From assembly GCA_964057225.1 (NCBI GenBank), contig OZ059898.1, positions 10,850,001 to 10,914,000 of the forward strand: a stretch of DNA of 64,000 nucleotides. The letters run 5' to 3'. The notes under the pieces were generated by a model. That model searched no databases. It saw only the letters and a program-made list of their open reading frames with translations, and was not told the origin of the DNA. This stretch comes from Auanema rhodensis. Taxonomy: Eukaryota > Animalia > Nematoda. The translations under genes were made by a program, and so were the position numbers. Numbering within the stretch: position 1 is the first letter of the stretch; every line of letters starts with the position of its first letter. Below, one piece after another: positions 37,913-64,000 of this stretch.

Positions 37913-39008
37913 CTTTATGAAATGCTTTGTGTCAAATCACGGTAACAACGAGCATACCCTAACAACTGAATACGGAAGAACACGAAAAAAGAAGAATTTC
38001 TTATTATATACATGTGTATAAGGAACATGATATTCGTTTGAAACTTAAAATCTAAATTCTTAAAAGTACAGGAGTTTTCTTCAAACATTCAAATGAAACT
38101 CTTGAATGAGCTGGGTGTGTATATGTGGATGTCGGTGAATAAGATGAGATTTTATGTCCACAAGATTGAATTTAGCAAGAAAAAGAAAAATAGTTTGAAG
38201 ATTATTGAAAAGAAAAAGTATAATTAAGAAATTAATTTTGTATTTGTATGTTTAAGATTGGCATATTTGGTGGGATTAAAAGAATTATCCTTTCAAGGCC
38301 TTGACCATATTCAACTTAATTGGAGGTCACTTTTTCTTATTCGGAATAGCTCAAATGTCTTTTCCATATTTTCATCGCAAGCAATTGATGTCAAGTGAGT
38401 ACATGAATGATTAATCGAACTTTTAAAATACTATTTGAACGTCTCAAATCAAAGTGAATATTCAAAGTTAAATAGTAAATTCATTTTAAAATTTAAAAAC
38501 TATCTTGTTATTTATAATAATGTATGAAAAACTAAAAATAAAATAATACAATATGAAAAGAAATAATTCTGGTTATGTCGAGAACGTCTGTAATAATCAG
38601 TTACAACTTCTTAATTCATTTATCTATGTGAACAATATTCTTTAACTTTTTTTTTAATTTTTAAAATTTTAATAAATCATTTATGTAATTCTATTATATT
38701 TATTTATAATTATGAATTGATTAAAGATATGTTATGTATTCATTTCAATATAAATATATCAATAACGCTCATTAAAGCTTTATTTCAGCGCAACAGTTAT
38801 AGACAAATTCAAATTAAAATATAGAGTATTTTGATGACGAATTTGATAATTTCAAAAACTAAGGCACAATGGTTAAAGCTGTTGAAAATAAACTCTTCAA
38901 ACATGATGAGCTCGAATCAATGTTCATGATGATCAAGTTTATTGAGTTCTTTCTTACAACAGCAAAAATGTTTTTTTGTTGAAGTCTTCAAAAGAGAGTG
39001 TGTGTATT

Positions 39009-39026
39009 AGAGGGAGAGAAAGAGAG

Positions 39027-39073
<47 letters not shown>

Positions 39074-39100
39074 GAGGAGGAGAGAGAGAGAAAGTGAGTG
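39009..39100. repeat. (GA)n-rich microsatellite
   Basis: Purine run with a pure (AG)n core at about 39033-39070. Confidence 0.9.
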
Positions 39101-40076: not shown

Positions 40077-43000
40077 TTAAGTCTCAATGGAATCCTTAAC
40101 AAGTTGTGGCACTTTGCTCTTCTCATCGACCGGCGGATCCGTTGTGATGTGAGGAATCTGGTGCTTCACCTGCAAACGTCATTTGAAAATAATGAACAAA
40201 TGTTGTGAATATGTTTTTGCAATATATGATGAAATTCATCATTATCAGAGGATATTTTATGTTTTTTTTTTGAATAAATGCATGCTATTGTTACTATATT
40301 AATTACATTATAACACATAAAACAAAGATAAGACAAGCTGTATGATAATGAATCAGCGTGCAAGATCATTTATGTAAATAAAAATGAACAACATGATCAT
40401 TTTATATACTTATAGTTTGCTCCAATATATCAGAAAGGGGGATTTATCGAAGATTTACAAGAAAAAAAAACTTAAAAGTACATTTGAAAGACACTATCGA
40501 TGTTCTTACAGTTTTAAAGTTTATATAATAGGAACAAGCAATAATTACAGTAAGCACACAACAATGGATGCACAAGATTTTTGAGGTTTTTTGAATATAA
40601 ACCTTTATAGAGTTATATTAAATTGAAGACAGAGCTTCAAAACAAAGTATTATAACTAAAAAAAATCAAAAACTGATTTGTTTCTTCTTTTACAAACCAA
40701 TATCAAATCATAAACATAAAAGCTTAACATGCATGCAGAATCGAAACTGAAGATTTCATTGAAAAACGGAAAACCAACCAAATGGTTTAGTTTTGTTACC
40801 CAAACACATTTAAAGTTTACAAAATCACTTTACATGAACAAAAAAAACAAATAATTAGCTGCAAATCTATACTAAGTAATGCTTTTAACAATACAATACA
40901 TTCAATCATCAATGCTCCACTGGTGGAGCCAAGTAATTTTGTGAAGCACTTTTCATCAGCGTACACGGTTTAGTTGTCGTTGAAGTATTTTTATCATTAT
41001 TATTATTATTTGTATTATTATTATTGTTATTATTACATATTTTCTGAAAAAATCACAAGCATTACAAACATATTAAGCCATCATTCCATAACATATAACT
41101 ACACAGGATTCCTTAAGGTCACTTTGACAAGCATATTTTCACATATTTTTAATGTTCTGATTGAATAAATCAAAACAATTTTTATTTTAAAAAAGTAAAG
41201 AATTTTTTATATTGAAAAATAACAAACCTCCTGTGATGCCCCTCCCCTTCGCACTACTGCCCCGTCCTGTTCGGCCATCAGTCTCGTCTGTTGGTGGTTC
41301 ATCTGTCCGTGACGCATGAAGGACGGAACGGCGTTCGAGTGAGTTCTGCTATAATATTCCGTATTAGATGAAAATTAACCGCGAAAATAAATTCAGAATA
41401 TGGTAAGAAACACCATGTCATAGTCATGACGTTAGATTACACAAACTCTGAATTCAGAATCAAGCTGCTTATTAAACTAAAAACAAAAAATCAGAAAAAA
41501 AAAAAGAAAAAAAAAAGAAAAACTACTACAGATTCGATTCAAAGCTAATAACTCATAGCACACACATATTTAAATCTAATCTCTCTATTCTATGAATAGA
41601 TGTGTATAATATATACACATAGTAAACGGTTTTTGTTTCTCATAAATTATAATTATTGTCTTTGTCTTTGTCGTCAAAACTTTTGACAGAGAGAAAGGAA
41701 GAAATGGGTTAAATAATAAACTAAAAAATATTAATTATTAGAATACGCCACAAAAAAAATTAAAAAAATCTGAGAGACTCGTATGCTCATCATGCAATTC
41801 CAAATATAAAAAAAAATTAATAAAAATCGAAAAAAAAGAGCAAACAAAGCACAGAAAATAGTTGAAAAAACTCTGAGCTAGCGCAGCTTGAAAATAAAAT
41901 TTCTAAATTTGAAAAAAAAAAAAATTAGAAGAAAGAATCGGCATAATAATCGTCATTCTTCAATTTTTTTTCTGTTAATTTCAAACTAAATATTGATCTA
42001 AGATTGTGAGAAATGACGATGTTAGAAGGCAACCAAGTTAGTTATCTAACTTGCTCATATCATTTTCATTTGAATCAGAATAAAATCTTGAAGAAATCAA
42101 ATCGCAAAATTATAAAAAACTATGCTTTTGAATTGATAAAGTTTTATAAAAGAATATTACTGATTCCAATGAAAAAGAATGTAATTAGCTGTTGAATGTA
42201 AGAAAACATAAAACTAAGGCTGGTTAATTTAGTAAAATAAGTGATTATGAAAGAAAAATTTAAAGGGAAAGGTTTCTTCACCTTGGTTAGACGATGGGAT
42301 CTGCAAAAAAATACTGGTTGCTTTATAGAAATGATGTTAAATTATAAACAAATTAATATCATATTATTTTTATGAATATTTTTTTGAATACAGTTTCCAT
42401 TCTCTCTATTTCTATTTTTTGTTTGTTTTACATTTATTAACTTTGATCCCTCCAATTGTACAAAGCTATTCATGAAACCTAAGTATTAATCCATTGAGTG
42501 AGCTAATACATGAAATCTTGAAGGTATCTTAAAGGCATCTTTAGCTCTCAACAATCTTGCTAGCCTATTAGATCTTGGATTTAAGGACATGAAAACCCTT
42601 AAATAGACAACTTGAATTAAGCTAATTGCTCTAACGAGCATCTTAATTGTAATCTAATTGAATGTAATTTGTGTCTCTTTGTGTGATAGCATAGCCAAAA
42701 ATGATATTTGATCTATTTTTCCTAATCTTAAATGTTATGAGACAGTAGATAGTAGAAGAAGAATTAAATAAAAAATCTATTTATTTATTTCTTTATCTTT
42801 CTTTCTATCTATGATGATGTGTATGTATAATATAATTTTATTTATATTTATATATGGATATACATACATATAATTATCGAAGTTTAACTATAATACTTTA
42901 AAACATACTTTTAGACTAAGTAGCATTCCATGATGAACTATGGAACCTTATGCTCACACGATCAAAAACATTTTAAGATCTAACCCCTTTCAAAAGTTAT

Positions 43001-46000
43001 AATATTTCTTAAATACTAATGGATTAATAAATTAAAAAAAACCCTAGTTGACTATATAACTATTTAATTTTTTGAGAAAATTTATATATTAAAGGGAATA
43101 TGGTGATGGGGGTGATGATGATGAGGGGGGGGGGGTGAAAAAACTAAAGTTATTACTTTCTTTTCTGACTTAATTATAAAATAATTATTAATATATAATA
43201 TATTTAACGTTTATATTAGTTCAAATTATTTACCTTCTTCCATAGCCGATGTTCCCATCCCCTCGGACTGATGTCAATTCATCTGTATTAGTTTGAGTTG
43301 TATTATTGAAATCACGTGTTGATTCAAGCTAAAAAAACAGTTCATTAAACAACATCAACTTCATCAACATTCAAACAGCTTTTATATGAAAAAATAAAAT
43401 AATAAATTGATCTTGATGACATAAATTACTTTCACAAATTGCTTCAAGAATAATATTAATCATATTCATCACTTCTTTTAAAATTATAATAAATTCGAAA
43501 CATAAATTATATGTGAAATATGTTTTTTTGTTCTTTTCTCAATTGTTTTTCTTCAGCTTTTCTCTTTTTTTTCATATACATATGCTGATGACACTGACCA
43601 AGAAAATGAAGAAGGCAAAATCTTTCCTTTCGAAATTAAAAAAAAAGGGTTTTTCTTAGTTATAATAAATATGTTGGAATGTAAAGCAAGCTGACTAATA
43701 ATGCTGTATTACTATGACGATGAAAAACTTACTGGGTAATCCCAATTACGACGTCGTGGCTGATTCTGTCGATTACGTCTCATACACAATACAAATCCAT
43801 AGATTATTAATAGCACATAACCAGTTATAGTAATTGCAATAAAACATATTCTCATATCATTCAAATATTGAGCCACATCGTGTAAGTCGTCGGCCATTCG
43901 AATGAACTTGTATGACTCGCTGAAAAGAAACAAAATTGTCGTATGAAATTCAATTTTCACGTGAAATATTATTCTTATTGTCGTTGTTTAGGATGAATTT
44001 TTGCTTTTCATTCTTATATTTTTCAGCTTTCTGTTGAAGATTTCTTGAAACTTTACGTGATTTTGAATGATTATTGAAACTTAAAAGTTTAGCATGATGA
44101 ATTAAAATTTATTTTGCACTATCAATCTTTATCACTCTTTATCACCCTTTTTCTTACCAAGTTGCACAACATTGAAAATAATCTGAATTTTTTCATATAG
44201 TTAATAAACCTTTTTTCAATAACATCTGATAATATAGATAGCATTAAAGACTTTGTCCTCTCAATATCTTCATCCCTGTGTGGCATGACAGTATCCTTAT
44301 ATTACATAAAGAATATTTATAAATGATTGACTAATACTCCTGTGAAATAAAATAAAATAAAATAGATAGATAGATATAAGTATAATGTAATGGCAAGATA
44401 TCAAGGTTATACAGCTGGATGCTTTCAGAGGATACTATGAAGGAAATGAATGTGGTCGAAAATCATATCAGAAAATTTTCTAAATATATCCTGGTTTTCC
44501 GGTATATTTTTATAAAATAATCTTGAGCAAAACTAATGGAAGATTTTGATCCATAAGCATTTCTTCTTCAAGAAATAAAAACGAAAAAAATAAAGGAATT
44601 CATAATAGTTTTCGTTTTTGACTCGAAAAGTCCCGGTAAGAAGGTTTTATTGGTGTTTGACAACAGAAAAAAACTTTTATTCTAAATAAAAAAAGATGCT
44701 TCAAAAGTGAAGATAAAGGAAGAGCTGAAAGCCAAGGGTGTGTATGTTCCTGCTTGACAGCAAAACCCAAATGGATATGAAAGCCGGTACAACAAAGGAA
44801 TTCGGAAAACCCGAATTGCTGATGAGCACACGGCATGGTTAAGCATAGTATATACGAAGATCCATTGCAGTTGTATTGAAGGGGATTTTTGCTCTTATTC
44901 CTCTTTTTTTTTTTGAGAAAAGGTACACGGCGTGTATGCGCTTTAGAAACTTGAAAGAGCAAGCTTCATATTTTGGTGAAGAAATAGGAGATGCTTTCTA
45001 GAGAATCAGAAAGGTAACTCAGAGAAATAAAGAAAACGAAAAAGAGAAAAACAGAGAAGGATGAAGAAAGAGATAGAATAAGAAAAAGAATAGAAAGAGT
45101 AGTATAGAGAAAAAAAGAAGGCCGAGTTAGTGAAGCTAGACAAGAAGGGCGTGAAGGTTGTTAAGATAAAGCACTTTCTTGCACTTTGTCCCAAAGATGT
45201 CACCCAAGGCCCCCTTATCCACAAATTTCTCCAAAAGCATACTTCAATTTATCAGAAATTAAGAAAAGTTATGAACAAATCAAGAAAGTGTTCGACATTC
45301 ACTTCGTGAAGCTCAGCAAAAAGCCCGCTCGTTTATTTGCAAGCAAATTCACGAACACAGTTTTCGTTTTAAAAGGAACTTAAATTGCTCCCACGTTCGC
45401 AAAATTCAGTTAATAATTTTTCTTGGCGAACTTCCGATAGTTTTGAAGAAAAGAATAAGGTGTATCAATGCCCTTTTGAGTGAAGTAGATAACACAAGTA
45501 AAGATTTTGAAATAAATCATATAACAGGTTGAATTTTTGTAAAATTGAATTGATATACGAATTTGAAGAAATGTTCGTGCATTCTGTTCGAACTTTCATC
45601 TTAGCATGGGACGGATTAAGGAAGAGGTCTTCTTCCTCTAAGAAAAGCTAGTTCTAAAAAAGACGAAAACATAAAAAAAAGGCTTTTGGCCCACATGAAA
45701 GACCAAGCAGTTCGCGTCAAAAAAATGATCAGAAAATGAATAAGTTTTCACTGACTCGTTTATGTTTCACAAATCCCTTTTGCGAATGTAAACACAAATC
45801 AAAAAAAAAAACTTTTTAGCTGAGAAAAAGCGTTTCAGACGAGAAATTTTTGACACTTGAGACATACGGAAAAGTGAATGACAAAGAAATATTATTAATA
45901 CTGAGAGTAGTATTAATGATTAATATTTTAATTTTTTATAAAATTGAAGAATATTTATAGATCATGAGAATGAAAGCATATTTAAAAGAAAATTAAAAAA

Positions 46001-46291: not shown

Positions 46292-48688
46292 TGTAGTAGC
46301 CGAAATAGGCAGTATCCACAGTTTTCAAATGATATTATTGGTTAGCACGACGTATAGGAAGAGATGAGAAGATGAAGCAAACATCAAGAATGAACTTGGA
46401 TAAATTATAAAAGTTTTGCTGTGACAAAATAAATTTTTTTTTTTAAATTTATCAGATGAGCGTACATACATGTAAATATATGCAAGTATGTGGCTTTCTA
46501 GATGAATGTATTTGGGTTGTTCTTACTCCCTCTATCTTTCCTTTCTCGATCTTGTTCTCTCTTTCTCTCCTCCCTCTCTCTGTCACTGTCTTTTTCTCTC
46601 TATCTTTCTTTCAGTCGTCGTGTGCTTCAGACTCAGAGCATGTTAGCACTGCTCTAATCACATCCTGAATTATTCACACGTCTTCAAGCAGCCGATCGGA
46701 CTCGGATTGCTTCAAGCTTATACTCATTATATTTGACTCTTTTTCTCATTTTCTCTCTCCTCATTAACAATATAGTTAGTTCTTTCTCATGTTACCTAAT
46801 TATTTCAATGTGTCAAGTTCCCAAATCGACATATTTTACGTAGAATTTCGTGAATGAGGTACGTGAAAATCTGTTAGTTTTCAAGATAGACAGTTGACAG
46901 GTTAATTACTCGTTTTCTCTTCTTCACAAATCTTCGTGCAAATATATTGCTTCTTGAAATTTATAGCATTCAGCTCGAACTATTTATATCATTTAGCATG
47001 TAAGTCGAGATCTTTCTAAATTGCCCTATCTGATTTCTTATTAGACATCAGCAGTAATTCATAAGTTATTTCTTCTTAAATGCATGTGAACCACTTACAA
47101 AGCTCATATCTTTATAATTTATTATAAAGATTCCTTGTTTATGTATGTCAGTATGACATAGTAAAGTTTTTAATAATTTCAAATAAGAAGTGCATATATA
47201 CAATTGGCTTTATTTTTATATTTTTCTTCTTTTATTTTATTTTGTTGATGTTGTTAGTAATATTTAAAAGTTCTTTCACATAACTTAATCTTTAGAATAA
47301 TTTCTTTTTCTTTATAATTAAATTTTTTTACTTTTATTAATTTTTTATCTCTTAAATATTCTATAACATTCCATGATATAGTATATAATATTTAATATAT
47401 TCCTTAAACTTACCCATAATCCGGTGGGCGATGAGCGTAGAAGTCCATCTCTCATTTATACAGTTGATATTCTTAAGAAACAATTTCAAAAATTAATTTT
47501 AATTCGAAAAAAATAAACGGAACGGTTCAAAATGTCAAAGAAAATTGAAAGAAATATTACTTTTGTTTAAAAATAAATAAATAAAGTTGGTCTTTGTTAA
47601 GGACTAAGATAATTCTATGAAACTTTGTATGAATTCAGTTTAGAAAAACAATGTAAGAAGTAGTTGAAGAGCTTATAATTTTATTTTAAAAGTGCAGTTT
47701 TTAGAAATGTCTCATCTAAGCTATGTGGATGATGTTACCAACTAGTACTGAATGTAATTACCTCAACAAAAGTTATTTTTTAGGTAAAATAAAGTTGAAA
47801 ACTAAAAACGTTTGAAAACAATTCACACGCTGGTCTATTGAATCTGAAAAATCGGTAACAGAGCCGAAAAAACATAAGAAAAAAAAAGAAAAGAATGATG
47901 AAGAAGAAGAAGAATAAGAGCATGTATCACTTTTTTTTTCTTTTTTTTGGCTTCCTGAGGGACAGCATTTTGATAGAAGATGAATCTCAAAGAAGAGGAA
48001 TAGAAAAAAGACCTTAAAGTAAAAAGGAAATAAGAATGTGATAGACATTATAATGAGCAAAAGATTGTGTGAAAATAGTTTTTTTCAACTCAAATATTAG
48101 GTAATTCGTTTATTATTTAAAGAATATTTGAATTTATAAGTATTGAACATCAATTCATTATTACATTATTCAGCTATAACATGCTTGTTTATCGTTGTCA
48201 TTGATGCTGATATTGAAGATCATGAAACAACTAAAGCTGATTCAAAATCTTTGAATAAATTGATGAAGAAAAGAAAAATAGTTATCATGTTTTTTTATTA
48301 TACAATTGCTTTAATCTTTAACGTTATAAGATTAAATATAAAGGAAAAAAACAAAAAAAGTATTCAAATTTGGAAAAGTTCTGAATGGATCGAGAATATG
48401 ATGGTGGTGATGGATATGAGGCTTAACAGTTGAATAGTAAATTGGTGTGCACAAGTTTTGATAGACATGCGGTTTGCTCTTCGTCTTCTGTCATCAAGGA
48501 AGACAAGAAAATGATGATGCAACTTGACGTATCAACTCAGGCTGAAGTTGATTTGAAATAACGATACTTCAAATTGTTGGCAGTCATTGCATAAGTAATT
48601 CATGAATTCAAAATTTGGATTAATTTAATTTTTGTTGAAGTTTGAAGAAAACTTAATTTCTTGAACTTCGAAAGTTTATGATAGTTTA

Positions 48689-54600: not shown

Positions 54601-57600
54601 AAAGCAGAACCTAGGTAATTACTATAAACGTATCTCGTTGTCAAGGAGAATATATCCAAATTTAAGATCAGTATTCAATCCATAACTTCATATCATTCAT
54701 CTCTAGTTTTGAGTTATTTTTCTCAAATCTTCATTTTCTAGTGAAGAGTTTTTCCAAATATTTTCCCATTTATTGTAAACTTACCTGAATTACATATACG
54801 AAAGCAATATCAATTGTATTAATTTTTATTCATTGAACTTACTCCCTAAAGATTAATGTGAAAGAACCTTTTAAATATTTTCAAATTTATATAATTATAT
54901 TCAACTAATTTCACCCTTTTTTATTTTTTTGAAAATATAGTTTAAAACAGATTTTGTTTTATGTGAAGCTTGATTAAGCTTATCTATTTAACGTACCCTT
55001 TTATTGGTCCTCCTTCGTGTTCAGGTAAATTCAGGACATAGACACTCATTCGTTCAACTAATCGACCAGAATAATCTTTAACATTAAGTTTGTTTGTATA
55101 TCAACAATCAATTGAAGAAAAATAATAAAAAAAATAATAAAACGTAAAAACTGGGAGAAATGGCTGTGAAGTCGATAGGAAAGAAAGTAGGAAACCGTGA
55201 GTTCAACTTGAAGGCACTTGACATAAGTTCCGGATAACGATGGAATGATGAGAAAAGGAAAACTGGAGTAGGAGAACAAGTAAGCTAGAAGGATGGCTTG
55301 TATAACTCCTTCTATTGAATATAAAACTTTGAGCTTTCAAGGTGAATAGTAAGCATATTTTGATTTTCAAATTGAAAATCCGCTGAACATTGTGAAAGAA
55401 TGCTTGAACTGGTTTGATCAAGGGGTTTTCAAGCTTAACATAGTATGAGTTACAGGTTGAAGCTGCTTGTGTTAAGTTCAGAATGATGAAAGTGAAGGGT
55501 AATTCATATCCATCAAATTGAAGTTATAATGATTTGAAAATTCATCGTGAAACTACATAACATTAGTAGAAGATAGTTTTCATGTGATTATTGAATGACA
55601 AGCAAGTACAATCAGTTGTACTGATCCATCAACCTATTTGAAATCGGACATGCATCTAATAACCAGATGACATAGAAGACATTTTCAAAGAGAAAAAGAG
55701 AGAAAAATAGTAAAAATAGAAGAGAAGAAGTAAAAAGGAAAAAAGACATAGAGAAAAAGAAGTCAAGTCAAAGGAAATAAGAATACAAAAGAAAGATATA
55801 TCTCGGAGGGAAATGTTGCAAAGGATACGTGTCAGCTGCTGTTAGTTATCTATGGTTCAGACTACAAAAATAGATTGAGCATATACGGAAATTGAAATCG
55901 AATATCTGACACAATTGAGTTAATAAATATAAATAATCAAAAACTTAAACTTCTAATACTCGTATTCATTAGTATAGAAATTATGAAAAAATTACTTAAA
56001 TTACAGAAAAAACGTGACTGATTGAAAAAATAAAAAGATGGAATATAGCTGTGACCTGCATCTCATACATATTGTATCGTTTTGAGATGTCGATTTATGA
56101 AATCGAAACGGACATCAAAGTAATATGAAGACGGTGAGAACGTTGCAAATGGGTGGCGAAGAACAAACATAGAATAAGATTCTACGATCATATCCAGATG
56201 GTATATATTCATTTTAAACACATCTTTCTTAGGAAAAATGAAATTTGTTTCAAGACATCAAGTAGAATATGACAAATTGTGACTCAGACGACACATAGTA
56301 TCACCACGAAGGGATCTTCTGAAGTACTTCCACTTCAAATATGCCATATCTTGACTGAGGGATTCATCTGTCCACATACAGTTTGTGGAAGAATAATAAG
56401 CTTCGACATGCTTCGAGCATGTTATTCACTAATTTGAGTAACGCAAGTATTGGGGTAGAGCTCAAAATGGTTTTTTTTCTTTGCAGAAATAAGGTTCTAA
56501 AGTAGATGTAGAGTGGATCTCAAGAAGTGAAAAAGAGAAGCCACAAAGAAAAACGGAAAACATGAAGAAAATCTTTTTATCGCTTTTTTTTTCTATTTGT
56601 TCATTATTGCTATGAAAGGAAGATGAAGTGAGAAACGGAAAAAGAGTAAGAAAAATGGAGTAATGAAGGAAAATTAGAAGCTAAGAAAGATAGAATTTGT
56701 TTTATTTTTTCAATGTTCACATATAATTTTAATTCAGTGAATGAAAGAAGTTCTTCGGAACAAAGGTGCATATATTTCAGACTTTAGAGATTGCTTCAAT
56801 AATGATGATCATAGTGATAGTGAGGATTACACAAAAAATTTGAGTTGACAGCTTCCAATCATATTAGACAACGAGGATGCGTGCTCTGACAACTTAGCGT
56901 GCAATTTCTTCGTAAATGTCAATCACTGATCATAAAATATCATTTTATTCATCAACATATTAATCTCATCTTATTCAGATAAATGAAAATATGACTTGTA
57001 ATTGAAGATATAACATAGAGAACAAAACGCGTATGCAACTGCTTCATAAAATTATTTCATGATGATAACTGGAAAGGGAGAGGATATAACGAAAATCTGA
57101 AACTTTTCTGATGTATTGTGAATATTTAATATATAAAATGTCACATATATCTTACATTTGTGTCTTTATGCCCCCCCCCTCTCTCTATCTTTTTTTTGTC
57201 AGGGAGGATCAACGTATAGACGTTCTTTCTTTCCCCTGAAGGTATTTTCATAAAATAAAAAAGTGGAAAAAAATGGAGAGAATAACAAAATAGCAACACC
57301 CCTTGACACCAGCTTTGTCGTTCATTGTCACAAAAATCAGTGTCACTTCAGAAGTTTCCTTTGAATGATTTGAAGATGAAAATGAGTGTCAGCTGATAGC
57401 ATAGTTAAGATTTTTTGTTGAAATAATCACTCAAATCAATCAATATAGAAATATTTACAGATAAAATGTGAGAAGAACAAAAACATTTGAATGTTTGAAT
57501 AAATTAAGTACATCATATAGCCAATAGAATAATTAAATCACTTTATAATTGAAGGGACAATATTTGAAGGAAGCATTCAAAACCCGCCTTAGGGCATTTA

Positions 57601-63600: not shown

Positions 63601-64000
63601 CGAGTTGACCCGCAAATAAGATGAGGAAGTTTTTATAGCGATCAGAAGACAGTTTTTATTTTCAATTTGAAGAAAATAAAGTAGGATAATTCAAAAAAGA
63701 ATGAACACTTGAGCGTTGTGCATTTAAAAAGTAAAATTAACTGAAAAAACCGTGGAAAGATGAAATTATGGTCCAATGATGAAATAACAAGAACGATTTC
63801 TTGTTGGTGGTCGGAGAACACATTAGAATTTCGTTTAAGCAACTTAGGTCAATCGAAGATGAGTCTCATGGGATTACAAGCTCAAACCTATAGCAAACAG
63901 ATGACGATTTTGAAGAGCACTAAAATGGAATGAAGATGATTACTACTTTATTTGTAGTTAAGGTTTGTGAATGAATTCTTCCTCTTACTTCTTTTCTCTC

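What the first reader, a model, noticed from the sequence alone, without database searches (positions are those of the whole stretch)
40077..43328. Micro-exon frame switch: a 19-nt exon may select between two reading frames of a dual-coding, GC-rich exon in a membrane protein's cytoplasmic tail
Seen in sequence: exon 43328-43234 ends in phase 2. A 19-nt micro-exon (42300-42282, TTTTTTGCAG/...AAG/GTGAAG) has good splice sites. The next exon (41348-41228, 121 nt) is open in both resulting frames. With the micro-exon it reads ..GRRSHRLTKQNSLERRSVLHASRTDEPPTDETDGRTGRGSSAKGRGITG, and an LxKQxS kinase-site-like motif forms across the junction. Without it, it reads ..GRSRTHSNAVPSFMRHGQMNHQQTRLMAEQDGAVVRRGGASQE, which continues into long ORFs in both last exons. 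This exon is 72/121 = 60% GC, far above the other coding exons here by eye, as expected if two frames constrain every position. Inference: one splicing decision could swap the whole intracellular tail of a small single-pass protein, for example an auxiliary subunit or adaptor. Caveat: a second open frame in GC-rich sequence of this length is not rare on its own.
Basis: partly seen in the sequence, partly recalled or inferred. Interest (0 to 1): 0.8.

Follow-up and report, generated by a model that had tools for sequence, protein, structure and literature searches.

The report
Frame-switching micro-exon in membrane-protein gene
A 19-base exon in a small nematode membrane-protein gene shifts the reading frame so that the next two exons encode one of two different cytoplasmic tails; the same switch exists in the C. 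elegans gene T06F4.1, so this is a real, conserved example of a known kind of dual coding.

Summary
I could not get RNA reads from this species.

**What the gene is.** It lies on the minus strand, at least 55049-40077, and is the orthologue of C. elegans T06F4.1. This is an uncharacterised single-pass membrane protein family found across nematodes. The window comes from an Auanema species.

**Evidence that the micro-exon is real.**
- In the sibling species Auanema sp. JU1783, all four annotated isoforms include the same 19-nt exon.
- Between the two Auanema genomes the exon is an 87%-identical island in an otherwise unalignable intron.
- Both of its substitutions are silent in the included frame.

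**Evidence from C. elegans.**
- RefSeq carries both the skipped and the included isoforms. The C. elegans exon is 22 nt.
- A published RNA-seq table lists it as a PRP-40-dependent cassette exon.

**Evidence for dual coding.**
- Silent changes in the main frame are strongly depleted where the two frames overlap. C. elegans versus C. briggsae gives 2/45 against 60/108 codons. The window versus JU1783 gives 8/54 against 40/108.
- The depletion ends at the alternative-frame stop codon in both genera.

**What is not supported.** The kinase motif, the auxiliary-subunit role and the "tweety" database label.

**Novelty.** It is a new member of a known kind: non-triplet micro-exons that create dual-coding isoforms were described in C. 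elegans in 2026. The scan's earlier notes did not record this gene.

The parts
54996..55049 (-). Distal alternative first exon (MSVYVLNLPEHEGGPIKG)
   Evidence: tblastn gives 18/18 identity to the N-terminus of Auanema JU1783 isoform P0097. The same N-terminus occurs in C. elegans P0060 and P0099.
47413..47448 (-). Alternative first exon (MDFYAHRPPDYG)
   Evidence: tblastn gives 10/12 identity to the N-terminus of JU1783 isoform P0096.
44210..44286 (-). Proximal alternative first exon (MPHRDEDIERTKSLMLSILSDVIEK + 2 nt)
   Evidence: It is 82.5% identical at DNA level to the JU1783 first exon and 22/25 residues match P0078. The 77-nt length follows the JU1783 exon map.
43733..43919 (-). Common exon A: the conserved ESYKFIRMADDLHDVAQYLNDMR motif, the transmembrane helix and the basic RRNRQNQPRRRN stretch
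   Evidence: It hits nematode proteins at E 1e-25. The residues upstream of the ATG at 43897 are conserved, so the exon is internal. It is 89% identical to JU1783.
43234..43328 (-). Exon E1 (LESTRDFNNTTQ...GNIGYGR), ending in phase 2
   Evidence: Orthologous exons were found in Nippostrongylus, a filarial contig and Caenorhabditis.
42282..42300 (-). 19-nt non-triplet cassette micro-exon (reads RSHRLTK with the 2 nt carried over from E1)
   Evidence: It has the best acceptor and the best donor in the intron. It is an 87% conserved island against JU1783, and both substitutions are silent in this frame. It is annotated as an exon in JU1783, at L008 31705-31723. Counterparts exist in C. elegans and C. 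briggsae (22 nt) and C. auriculariae (19 nt).
41228..41348 (-). Dual-coding exon E3. A tandem acceptor allows a start at 41348 or 41345. The last 27 nt (41254-41228) are an Auanema-specific extension.
   Evidence: The skip frame is conserved across nematodes (FMRHG..QTTRL). The included frame is annotated in JU1783 and Caenorhabditis. Silent change is suppressed and wobble positions are GC-rich.
40909..41043 (-). T1: a candidate alternative stop-carrying exon, usable only in the skip frame (KICNNN...KSASQNYLAPPVEH*)
   Evidence: It has a strong acceptor. Its C-terminal end is conserved with JU1783 and most changes there are silent. A matching in-phase acceptor exists in JU1783. No transcript evidence was obtained.
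40123..40169 (-). Dual-coding part of last exon T2. The included frame reads GEAPDSSHHNGSAGR and ends at TGA 40125-40123.
   Evidence: It has 0 differences in 47 nt against JU1783. The JU1783 coding sequence ends at the same point.
40077..40122 (-). Single-coding remainder of T2 (skip frame only; ...EKSKVPQLVKDSIET, stop TAA 40079-40077)
   Evidence: It has 6 silent differences in 16 codons against JU1783, starting directly after the alternative-frame stop. The protein end is conserved across nematodes.

Best explanation
The locus is the 3' half of the Auanema orthologue of C. elegans T06F4.1. This gene encodes a roughly 170-200 residue single-pass membrane protein. It has several alternative first exons, one common exon with a conserved motif and the transmembrane helix, and a C-terminal tail that is probably cytoplasmic.

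A 19-nt cassette micro-exon lies between E1 and E3, and its length is not a multiple of three.

**When it is skipped,** E3 and T2 are read in the ancestral frame. This gives the tail conserved across nematodes (..PSFMRHG..NHQQTRLMAEQDG..VKHQIPHITTDPP..KVPQLVKDSIET).

**When it is included,** the frame shifts by +1. The same 165-168 nt are then read as a different, basic and glycine/serine-rich tail (RSHRLTK NSLERRSVLHASRTDEPP...GEAPDSSHHNGSAGR). That tail ends 46 nt before the main stop, inside the last exon.

One splicing choice therefore replaces the whole conserved tail with an overprinted one.

**Shown here:**
- The exon is conserved and is annotated in a sibling species.
- Both frames are open.
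- Both isoforms exist in C. elegans.
- Selection acts on silent sites exactly where the frames overlap.

**Inferred:**
- Both isoforms are made in this species.
- The alternative tail is translated and has a function of its own.
- The choice is regulated, probably by the micro-exon machinery, since the C. elegans exon depends on PRP-40.
For: **1. Orthology.** Exon A hits T06F4.1-family proteins across nematodes. The window's included isoform is 168/180 identical to Auanema sp. JU1783 protein P0078.

**2. The micro-exon in the sibling species.**
- All four JU1783 isoforms carry RSHRLTK plus the alternative-frame tail.
- The exon map gives exons of 95, 19, 118 and 47 nt.
- Only exons align between the two Auanema genomes, and the micro-exon region is one of the aligned islands, at 87%.
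- Its two substitutions, TCC>TCT and CGT>CGG, are silent in the included frame.

**3. Caenorhabditis.**
- C. elegans RefSeq has skip forms (NP_508693, NP_508694) and included forms (NP_001362122-4).
- A 1334-nt Logan contig carries the included open reading frame uninterrupted, with a 22-nt insert.
- C. briggsae has the same 22-nt exon with one substitution, which is silent.
- C. auriculariae has a 19-nt version.

**4. Published RNA-seq.** The C. elegans 22-nt cassette is in Table S1 of PMC8378409 with q = 4.4e-6 and a PSI change of -0.29 in prp-40 mutants. Events in that table needed at least 5 junction reads for each isoform.

**5. Dual-coding signature.** Counts are main-frame silent codon differences, overlap versus the rest.

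| Comparison | Overlap | Rest | p |
|---|---|---|---|
| C. elegans vs C. briggsae | 2/45 | 60/108 | 4e-10 |
| C. elegans vs C. auriculariae | 15/43 | 62/96 | 0.0016 |
| Window vs JU1783 | 8/54 | 40/108 | 0.0035 |

Within T2, the counts before and after the alternative stop are 1/14 against 10/15 (p = 0.0017) and 0/15 against 6/16 (p = 0.018).

**6. Composition.** Wobble GC in E3 is 0.65 against 0.26-0.32 elsewhere in the gene. Only 4.6% of silent recodings at the gene's own GC3 keep the alternative frame open this far.

**7. The skip frame is under strong purifying selection.**
- It is 70/70 identical between the two Auanema species, and all 14 substitutions are silent.
- Its motifs are invariant across 15 nematode proteins.
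Against: - No transcript of this species was examined.
- JU1783's annotation holds only included forms, so skipping in Auanema is inferred from conservation of the skip frame.
- The alternative tail is less constrained than the main one. It is 54/61 identical against 70/70 between the Auanema species, and 7 of 8 substitutions in E3 change the alternative-frame residue.
- Between Auanema and Caenorhabditis the alternative tails resemble each other little more than the shared nucleotides dictate.
- In trichostrongyles, a filarial contig and Mesorhabditis, the alternative frame meets a stop inside or just after E3.
- Suppressed silent change could also reflect splicing signals in the exon rather than translation of the second frame.
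- The splice-site matrix used for the chance estimate is approximate and comes from general knowledge.
Confidence: 0.8

Rival explanations
1. The micro-exon is real, but the included isoform mainly removes the conserved tail. It would be a regulated loss-of-tail or dose-control isoform. On this reading the alternative-frame peptide has no sequence-specific function, and the silent-site constraint in E3 and T2 comes from exonic splicing signals.
For: - The alternative tail changes faster than the main tail: 54/61 against 70/70 identical between Auanema species, and 7 of 8 E3 substitutions alter it.
- The alternative tails of Auanema and Caenorhabditis share little beyond what the common nucleotides force.
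- In trichostrongyles the alternative frame ends early, inside E3.
- Dual-coded second frames are often disordered (PMC13247117).
Against: - The depletion of silent change stops at the alternative-frame stop codon in two genera. A splicing signal has no reason to do that.
- The alternative frame is kept open for 45-54 codons in Caenorhabditis and Auanema. Only 2-5% of silent recodings would allow this.
- The alternative tails of C. elegans, C. briggsae and C. japonica are almost identical.
- E3 shows no unusual RNA folding, with z near 0.
Confidence: 0.12
2. In Auanema the micro-exon is constitutive. Only the included form is made, and the skip frame is a relic.
For: All four annotated JU1783 isoforms are included forms. 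No Auanema skip-form protein was found in the protein collection.
Against: - The skip frame shows no amino-acid change in 70 codons between the two Auanema species, while 14 silent changes accumulated. A relic frame would not be preserved like this.
- After the alternative stop, T2 still evolves as coding sequence in the skip frame.
- T1 is open only in the skip frame and is conserved at protein level.
- C. elegans makes both forms.
Confidence: 0.05
3. The 19-nt 'exon' is a chance AG...GT pair, and the second open frame of E3 is a by-product of GC-rich sequence. Only the skip form exists.
For: - A second open frame of 40 codons in 60% GC sequence has roughly a one-in-four chance.
- Good splice-site pairs arise by chance in about 4% of such introns, and a 64-kb window has many introns.
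Against: - The exon is a conserved island between two Auanema genomes, with only silent changes.
- It is annotated as an exon in JU1783.
- Non-triplet counterparts exist at the same intron in three Caenorhabditis species, with transcript support.
Confidence: 0.03

Closest known systems
C. elegans T06F4.1 (uncharacterised protein; RefSeq NP_508693/NP_508694 skip forms, NP_001362122-4 included forms)
   Same: It is the orthologous gene.
- It has the same motif-plus-transmembrane exon, the same E1, E3 and T2 layout, and alternative first exons.
- A non-triplet micro-exon sits in the same intron.
- It shifts into the same alternative frame, whose stop falls within one codon of the same position in T2.
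   Different: - The micro-exon is 22 nt rather than 19 nt and differs in sequence (RGRIRQEK against RSHRLTK).
- Auanema E3 carries a 27-nt extension.
- Auanema has a further candidate skip-frame exon, T1.
- Exon A is split by an extra intron in C. elegans and C. briggsae.
Non-triplet alternative splicing giving dual-coding isoforms in C. elegans (Athavudeen, Issac & Norris 2026, PMC13247117), e.g. the 28-nt micro-exon of tnt-3
   Same: - A micro-exon whose length is not a multiple of three decides in which frame the downstream exons are read.
- More than 60 nt are dual-coding.
- Wobble positions are unusually conserved.
- The C. elegans exon depends on PRP-40.
   Different: - T06F4.1 was not found in the text of that paper or in its held supplements.
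- In this gene the skipped form is the ancestral one, and the switch affects a short tail that is probably disordered, not a folded domain.
- No functional test exists.
Classical mammalian dual-coding loci reached by alternative splicing or processing (CDKN2A INK4a/ARF; XBP1 26-nt frame-switching splice). Recalled from general knowledge, not tested here.
   Same: Two proteins share nucleotides read in different frames, and an RNA-processing choice selects the frame.
   Different: - CDKN2A uses alternative first exons rather than a cassette micro-exon.
- XBP1 uses unconventional cytoplasmic splicing.
- Neither is related in sequence to this gene.

Membership tests
T06F4.1 family of nematode single-pass membrane proteins | Conserved ESYKFIRMADDLHDVA-YLNDMR motif, directly followed by one transmembrane helix and a basic RRNR..RRR stretch | tested here: met
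   Exon A matches family members at E 1e-25 to 1e-20. The motif residues are invariant in a 15-protein alignment.
T06F4.1 family of nematode single-pass membrane proteins | Skip-frame tail with the FMRH, QTxRL, VKH and PxI motifs and a KVPxL ending | tested here: met
   The window's skip translation carries all of them.
Dual-coding isoforms from non-triplet cassette exons (class of PMC13247117) | A cassette exon whose length is not a multiple of three | tested here: met
   The exon is 19 nt in the window and JU1783, 22 nt in C. elegans and C. briggsae, and 19 nt in C. auriculariae.
Dual-coding isoforms from non-triplet cassette exons (class of PMC13247117) | At least 60 nt translated in two frames, with both frames open | tested here: met
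   The overlap is 118-121 nt of E3 plus 47 nt of T2, and both frames are open. The 60-nt threshold is quoted.
Dual-coding isoforms from non-triplet cassette exons (class of PMC13247117) | Both isoforms present in mRNA and not mere NMD substrates | not testable with these tools
- For the C. elegans orthologue, both isoforms are in RefSeq, the collection records each ORF on a Logan contig (only the included-form contig was fetched), and a published cassette table lists the exon.
- The alternative stop lies in the last exon, so the exon-junction rule would not predict NMD. That last point is inference.
Dual-coding isoforms from non-triplet cassette exons (class of PMC13247117) | Raised conservation of wobble positions in the overlap | tested here: met
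   Fisher tests on three species pairs gave p = 4e-10, 0.0016 and 0.0035. The boundary falls at the alternative stop.
PRP-40-dependent micro-exons (PMC8378409) | Inclusion drops in prp-40 mutants (|PSI change| of at least 20 points, q < 0.01) | not testable with these tools
   The criterion is met by the C. elegans orthologous exon in the paper's Table S1, with a PSI change of -0.29 and q = 4.4e-6. There are no data for Auanema.
Tweety homologues (TTYH) | Tweety domain (Pfam PF04906), five transmembrane helices, about 450-550 residues | tested here: not met
   Neither the exons nor full-length relatives hit Pfam. The proteins are 150-250 residues long with one helix. The name appears only as a UniRef label on two trichostrongyle entries.
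TMIE (transmembrane inner ear protein, channel auxiliary subunit) | TMIE domain (Pfam PF16038) | tested here: not met
   Pfam gives no hit. The only link is a language-model feature similarity of 0.92 in the Atlas, which is a lead at most.

The most novel reading that the evidence does not exclude
The frame-switching micro-exon may be ancient. On this reading it was already present in the common ancestor of Caenorhabditis, Auanema and the strongylid parasites. The second tail was overprinted on a much older tail-coding sequence, so a nematode-wide membrane protein has been toggled between two cytoplasmic tails by regulated micro-exon splicing ever since.

Candidate 22-nt exons in Nippostrongylus and Heligmosomoides share a conserved downstream flank and would fit this reading. 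In those species, however, the alternative frame is cut short.
Probability: 0.4. Interest if true: 0.6.

Novelty: new member of a known kind. Interest (0 to 1): 0.5.

Why it matters
Dual coding in animal nuclear genes is usually hard to separate from annotation noise. Four things make this case clean:

- a tiny exon of non-triplet length is kept in at least two genera;
- both frames stay open;
- silent-site constraint switches off exactly at the second frame's stop codon;
- the C. elegans copy is already known to be alternatively spliced and to depend on PRP-40.

That makes T06F4.1 a ready genetic model. It can be used to ask what an overprinted tail does, and how an old, strongly conserved tail and a younger one share the same bases.

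The result also gives a first functional handle on a conserved nematode-wide membrane protein that has no name, no Pfam family and no literature. The family includes orthologues in filarial and strongylid parasites.

For annotation, it shows that gene models of this family differ between species only because pipelines chose one or the other isoform. It also shows that names such as 'tweety homolog' attached to family members are wrong.

Tried and rejected
**1. Direct RNA evidence.**
- Two run searches found eight runs of one study that hold the exons.
From then on, local scripts used only pieces beside them.
- The local splice-site scan did read the whole intron from the window file, inside the closed script machine.

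**2. My own first reading.** I first took the micro-exon for a chance AG..GT pair. I dropped this.

**3. 'Tweety homologue'.** I followed this for a while because of a UniRef name. I rejected it because the family is small and single-pass and has no Tweety domain.

**4. Family assignment.** Pfam scans of the exons and of full-length relatives gave nothing above threshold. The Atlas gives only generic small-membrane-protein neighbours and a TMIE lead.

**5. RNA structure as the cause of silent-site constraint.** E3 folds no better than shuffles in three species.

**6. Synteny.** Caenorhabditis has a Cys-loop receptor gene downstream. tblastx found nothing like it in the window or in JU1783.

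**7. Look-ups that failed.** Exact look-ups for P0061, P0009 and P0078 found no recorded gene. I used P0060, P0073 and P0095 instead.

**8. Other species.**
- Mesorhabditis belari has no convincing micro-exon.
- blastn-short of the Auanema micro-exon against the Nippostrongylus and filarial introns found nothing beyond chance.

**9. Literature.** 'T06F4.1' occurs in no searchable main text, nor in the held supplements of the 2026 dual-coding paper.

Full report
**The observation**

- E1 is 43328-43234, 95 nt, and ends in phase 2.
- The 19-nt exon is 42300-42282, between ttttttgcag and gtgaag.
- E3 is 41348-41228, 121 nt and 59.5% GC, in a window of 30% GC. It is open in two frames.

Without the micro-exon, the frame continues into open frames in two downstream exons, T1 (41043-40909) and T2 (40169-40077). 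With it, T1 stops after three codons and T2 after fifteen.

I scored splice sites with an approximate nematode matrix. The micro-exon's acceptor and donor are each the best site in the 1885-nt intron. A pair this good appeared in 4.3% of Markov-simulated introns.

**Transcript evidence from this species could not be obtained**

Eight runs of one study hold the exons. One local script had read the whole intron inside the closed script machine.

**What the gene is**

The exon with the apparent start codon at 43897 hits nematode proteins. The residues upstream of that ATG (SESYKFIR) are conserved, so this exon is internal (43919-43733).

The family consists of proteins of 150-250 residues. They have variable N-termini, a conserved ESYKFIRMADDLHDVA.YLNDMR motif, one transmembrane helix, a basic stretch and a tail. 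The C. elegans member is T06F4.1, which is uncharacterised.

No Pfam family matches. The UniRef label 'tweety homolog' on two trichostrongyle entries is not backed by any domain. The same holds for other names attached to members: HtpX, lilli, t-SNARE and glucosidase ORF2.

The window's closest relative is Auanema sp. JU1783. The window's predicted included isoform is 180 residues and matches JU1783 protein P0078 at 168 positions. The window therefore comes from another Auanema species.

Three of JU1783's four alternative first exons are found in the window, at 44286-44210, 47448-47413 and 55049-54996.

**The micro-exon is real**

- All four annotated JU1783 isoforms read ...GNIGYGR RSHRLTK NSLERRSVLHASRTDEP...GSEAPDSSHHNGSAGR. 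That is E1, the micro-exon, and E3 and T2 in the included frame.
- Mapping P0078 onto its locus gives exons of 95, 19, 118 and 47 nt.
- Between the window and JU1783 only exons align. The micro-exon with about 30 nt of downstream flank is an 87% island in an otherwise unalignable intron.
- Its two substitutions, TCC>TCT and CGT>CGG, are both silent in the included frame.
- JU1783 uses the second AG of a tagCAG tandem acceptor, so E3 may start at 41345. The two acceptors score alike.

**The same switch exists in Caenorhabditis**

- C. elegans RefSeq holds skip-form isoforms (NP_508693, NP_508694) and included-form isoforms (NP_001362122 to NP_001362124). The two sets differ in the whole tail.
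- A 1334-nt Logan contig carries the included open reading frame uninterrupted. Compared with a skip-form strongylid transcript contig, it has extra bases between E1 and E3. In C. elegans the insert is the 22-nt AGGACGGATTCGACAGGAAAAG.
- In C. briggsae the same 22-nt exon lies in the intron with proper splice sites. It has one substitution, CAG>CAA, which is silent in the included frame.
- C. auriculariae has a 19-nt version, and its alternative frame is open to the same region of T2.
- Table S1 of the PRP-40 micro-exon paper (PMC8378409) lists the C. elegans 22-nt cassette at X:4058811-4058833, with q = 4.4e-6 and a PSI change of -0.29. Events in that table needed at least five junction reads for each isoform. 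The same table lists four alternative first exons for the gene.

Both junction patterns are therefore documented in the orthologue.

**The dual-coding test**

I counted codons that keep the same main-frame amino acid but differ in sequence.

| Comparison | Overlap (E3 + T2 to the alternative stop) | Rest of the coding sequence | p |
|---|---|---|---|
| C. elegans vs C. briggsae | 2/45 | 60/108 | 4e-10 |
| C. elegans vs C. auriculariae | 15/43 | 62/96 | 0.0016 |
| Window vs JU1783 | 8/54 | 40/108 | 0.0035 |

- At DNA level, E3 is 99% identical between C. elegans and C. briggsae. The other exons are 72-82% identical.
- Within T2 the change is abrupt at the alternative-frame stop. Before and after it, the counts are 1/14 against 10/15 in Caenorhabditis (p = 0.0017) and 0/15 against 6/16 in Auanema (p = 0.018).
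- Main-frame wobble GC in E3 is 0.65 in the window, against 0.26-0.32 in the upstream exons. In C. elegans it is 0.81 against 0.26-0.35.
- If the E3 and T2 protein is recoded at random with the gene's own GC3, the alternative frame stays open that far in only 4.6% of trials for the window and 1.9-2.0% for Caenorhabditis.
- E3 shows no unusual RNA folding.

**The two frames are not equal**

The skip frame is the ancestral one.
- Its tail motifs (FMRH, QTxRL, VKH, PxI, KVPxL) are invariant or nearly so across clades III, IV and V.
- It shows no amino-acid change between the two Auanema species over 70 codons, and all 14 substitutions are silent.

The included-frame tail is less constrained.
- It is 54/61 identical between the Auanema species.
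- Seven of the eight E3 substitutions alter it, and six of those eight lie in the last 36 nt of E3. That stretch contains a 27-nt extension found only in Auanema.

Outside Caenorhabditis and Auanema, the alternative frame meets a stop inside or just after E3. This holds for Nippostrongylus, Heligmosomoides, a filarial contig and Mesorhabditis.

Nippostrongylus and Heligmosomoides do have 22-nt candidate exons at the right place. These share a 19-nt downstream flank (95%, E 1e-4), but I have no transcript evidence for them.

**Interpretation**

The best reading is a regulated, non-triplet cassette micro-exon. It replaces a deeply conserved cytoplasmic tail with an overprinted alternative tail that ends 46 nt earlier in the same last exon.

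Three steps are inferred rather than shown: that both forms are made in this Auanema species, that the alternative tail has a function of its own, and that the orientation is tail-inside. The orientation rests on the basic stretch after the helix.

The main rival is that inclusion serves chiefly to delete the conserved tail. The constraint boundary at the alternative stop argues against that.

The Atlas similarity to TMIE is only a lead.

**Comparison with what is known**

Dual-coding isoforms produced by non-triplet alternative splicing were described as a class in C. elegans in 2026. That study reported 54 events, raised wobble conservation, and the PRP-40-dependent 28-nt micro-exon of tnt-3 (PMC13247117).

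The present case meets the testable criteria of that class. Its C. elegans orthologue is already annotated with both isoforms. However, T06F4.1 appears in no searchable paper text, nor in that paper's held supplements.

I therefore file it as a new member of a known kind. Its conservation across genera and its clean constraint boundary make it a good experimental case.

**Seen in passing**

T1 is probably a real skip-frame exon.
- In both Auanema species, a strong in-phase acceptor opens an exon that ends in KSASQ[N/I]YLAPP[V/M]E[H/Y] followed by a stop.
- Most nucleotide changes in that end are silent.

Noticed in passing
window 41043-40909 (conserved part 40953-40894); L008 33005-33154: T1 is a second stop-carrying exon that is open only in the skip frame. 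Both Auanema species have a strong in-phase acceptor here and a conserved C-terminal end, KSASQ[N/I]YLAPP[V/M]E[H/Y]*, where most changes are silent. The asparagine-rich start of the exon is not conserved. It may give a third tail. Whether it is a terminal exon or a cassette is unknown.
   Followed up: partly
window 41348/41345: E3 has a tandem tagCAG acceptor. C. auriculariae also has a cagCAG acceptor at this exon. Using one or the other adds or removes one residue in either frame.
   Followed up: partly
window 41254-41228: Both Auanema species have 27 extra bases at the 3' end of E3 (VRRGGASQE in the skip frame) that no other nematode examined has. This looks like a shifted donor site. Six of the eight substitutions in E3 between the two species fall in the last 36 nt of the exon, which contain this extension.
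   Followed up: partly
window 55049-54996, 47448-47413, 44286-44210: Three alternative first exons of the gene lie upstream, so the gene spans at least 15 kb of the window. A fourth first exon known from JU1783 (MASWLL...) was not found up to position 64000.
   Followed up: partly
L001 13970-13991 and L011 10347-10368: Nippostrongylus and Heligmosomoides each have a 22-nt candidate micro-exon in the orthologous intron. The two share a conserved flank directly downstream (19 nt, 95% identical). Including it would give a short alternative tail that ends inside E3. No transcript evidence was obtained.
   Followed up: partly
proteins P0074, P0006, P0063, P0018, P0042, P0003, P0093: Annotation problems in relatives. 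One C. briggsae model (214 aa) reads through intron sequence to keep the micro-exon in the main frame. Family members also carry unrelated names: tweety homolog, protease HtpX, lilli, t-SNARE domain protein and glucosidase ORF2.
   Followed up: partly
window about 39000-39095: A (GA)n microsatellite explains the GC-skew peak downstream of the gene.
   Followed up: yes
L005-L007, about 1.2 kb downstream of the Caenorhabditis gene: A Cys-loop ligand-gated channel gene lies convergent to T06F4.1 in C. briggsae and a related species. tblastx found no counterpart downstream of the gene in the window or in JU1783.
   Followed up: yes
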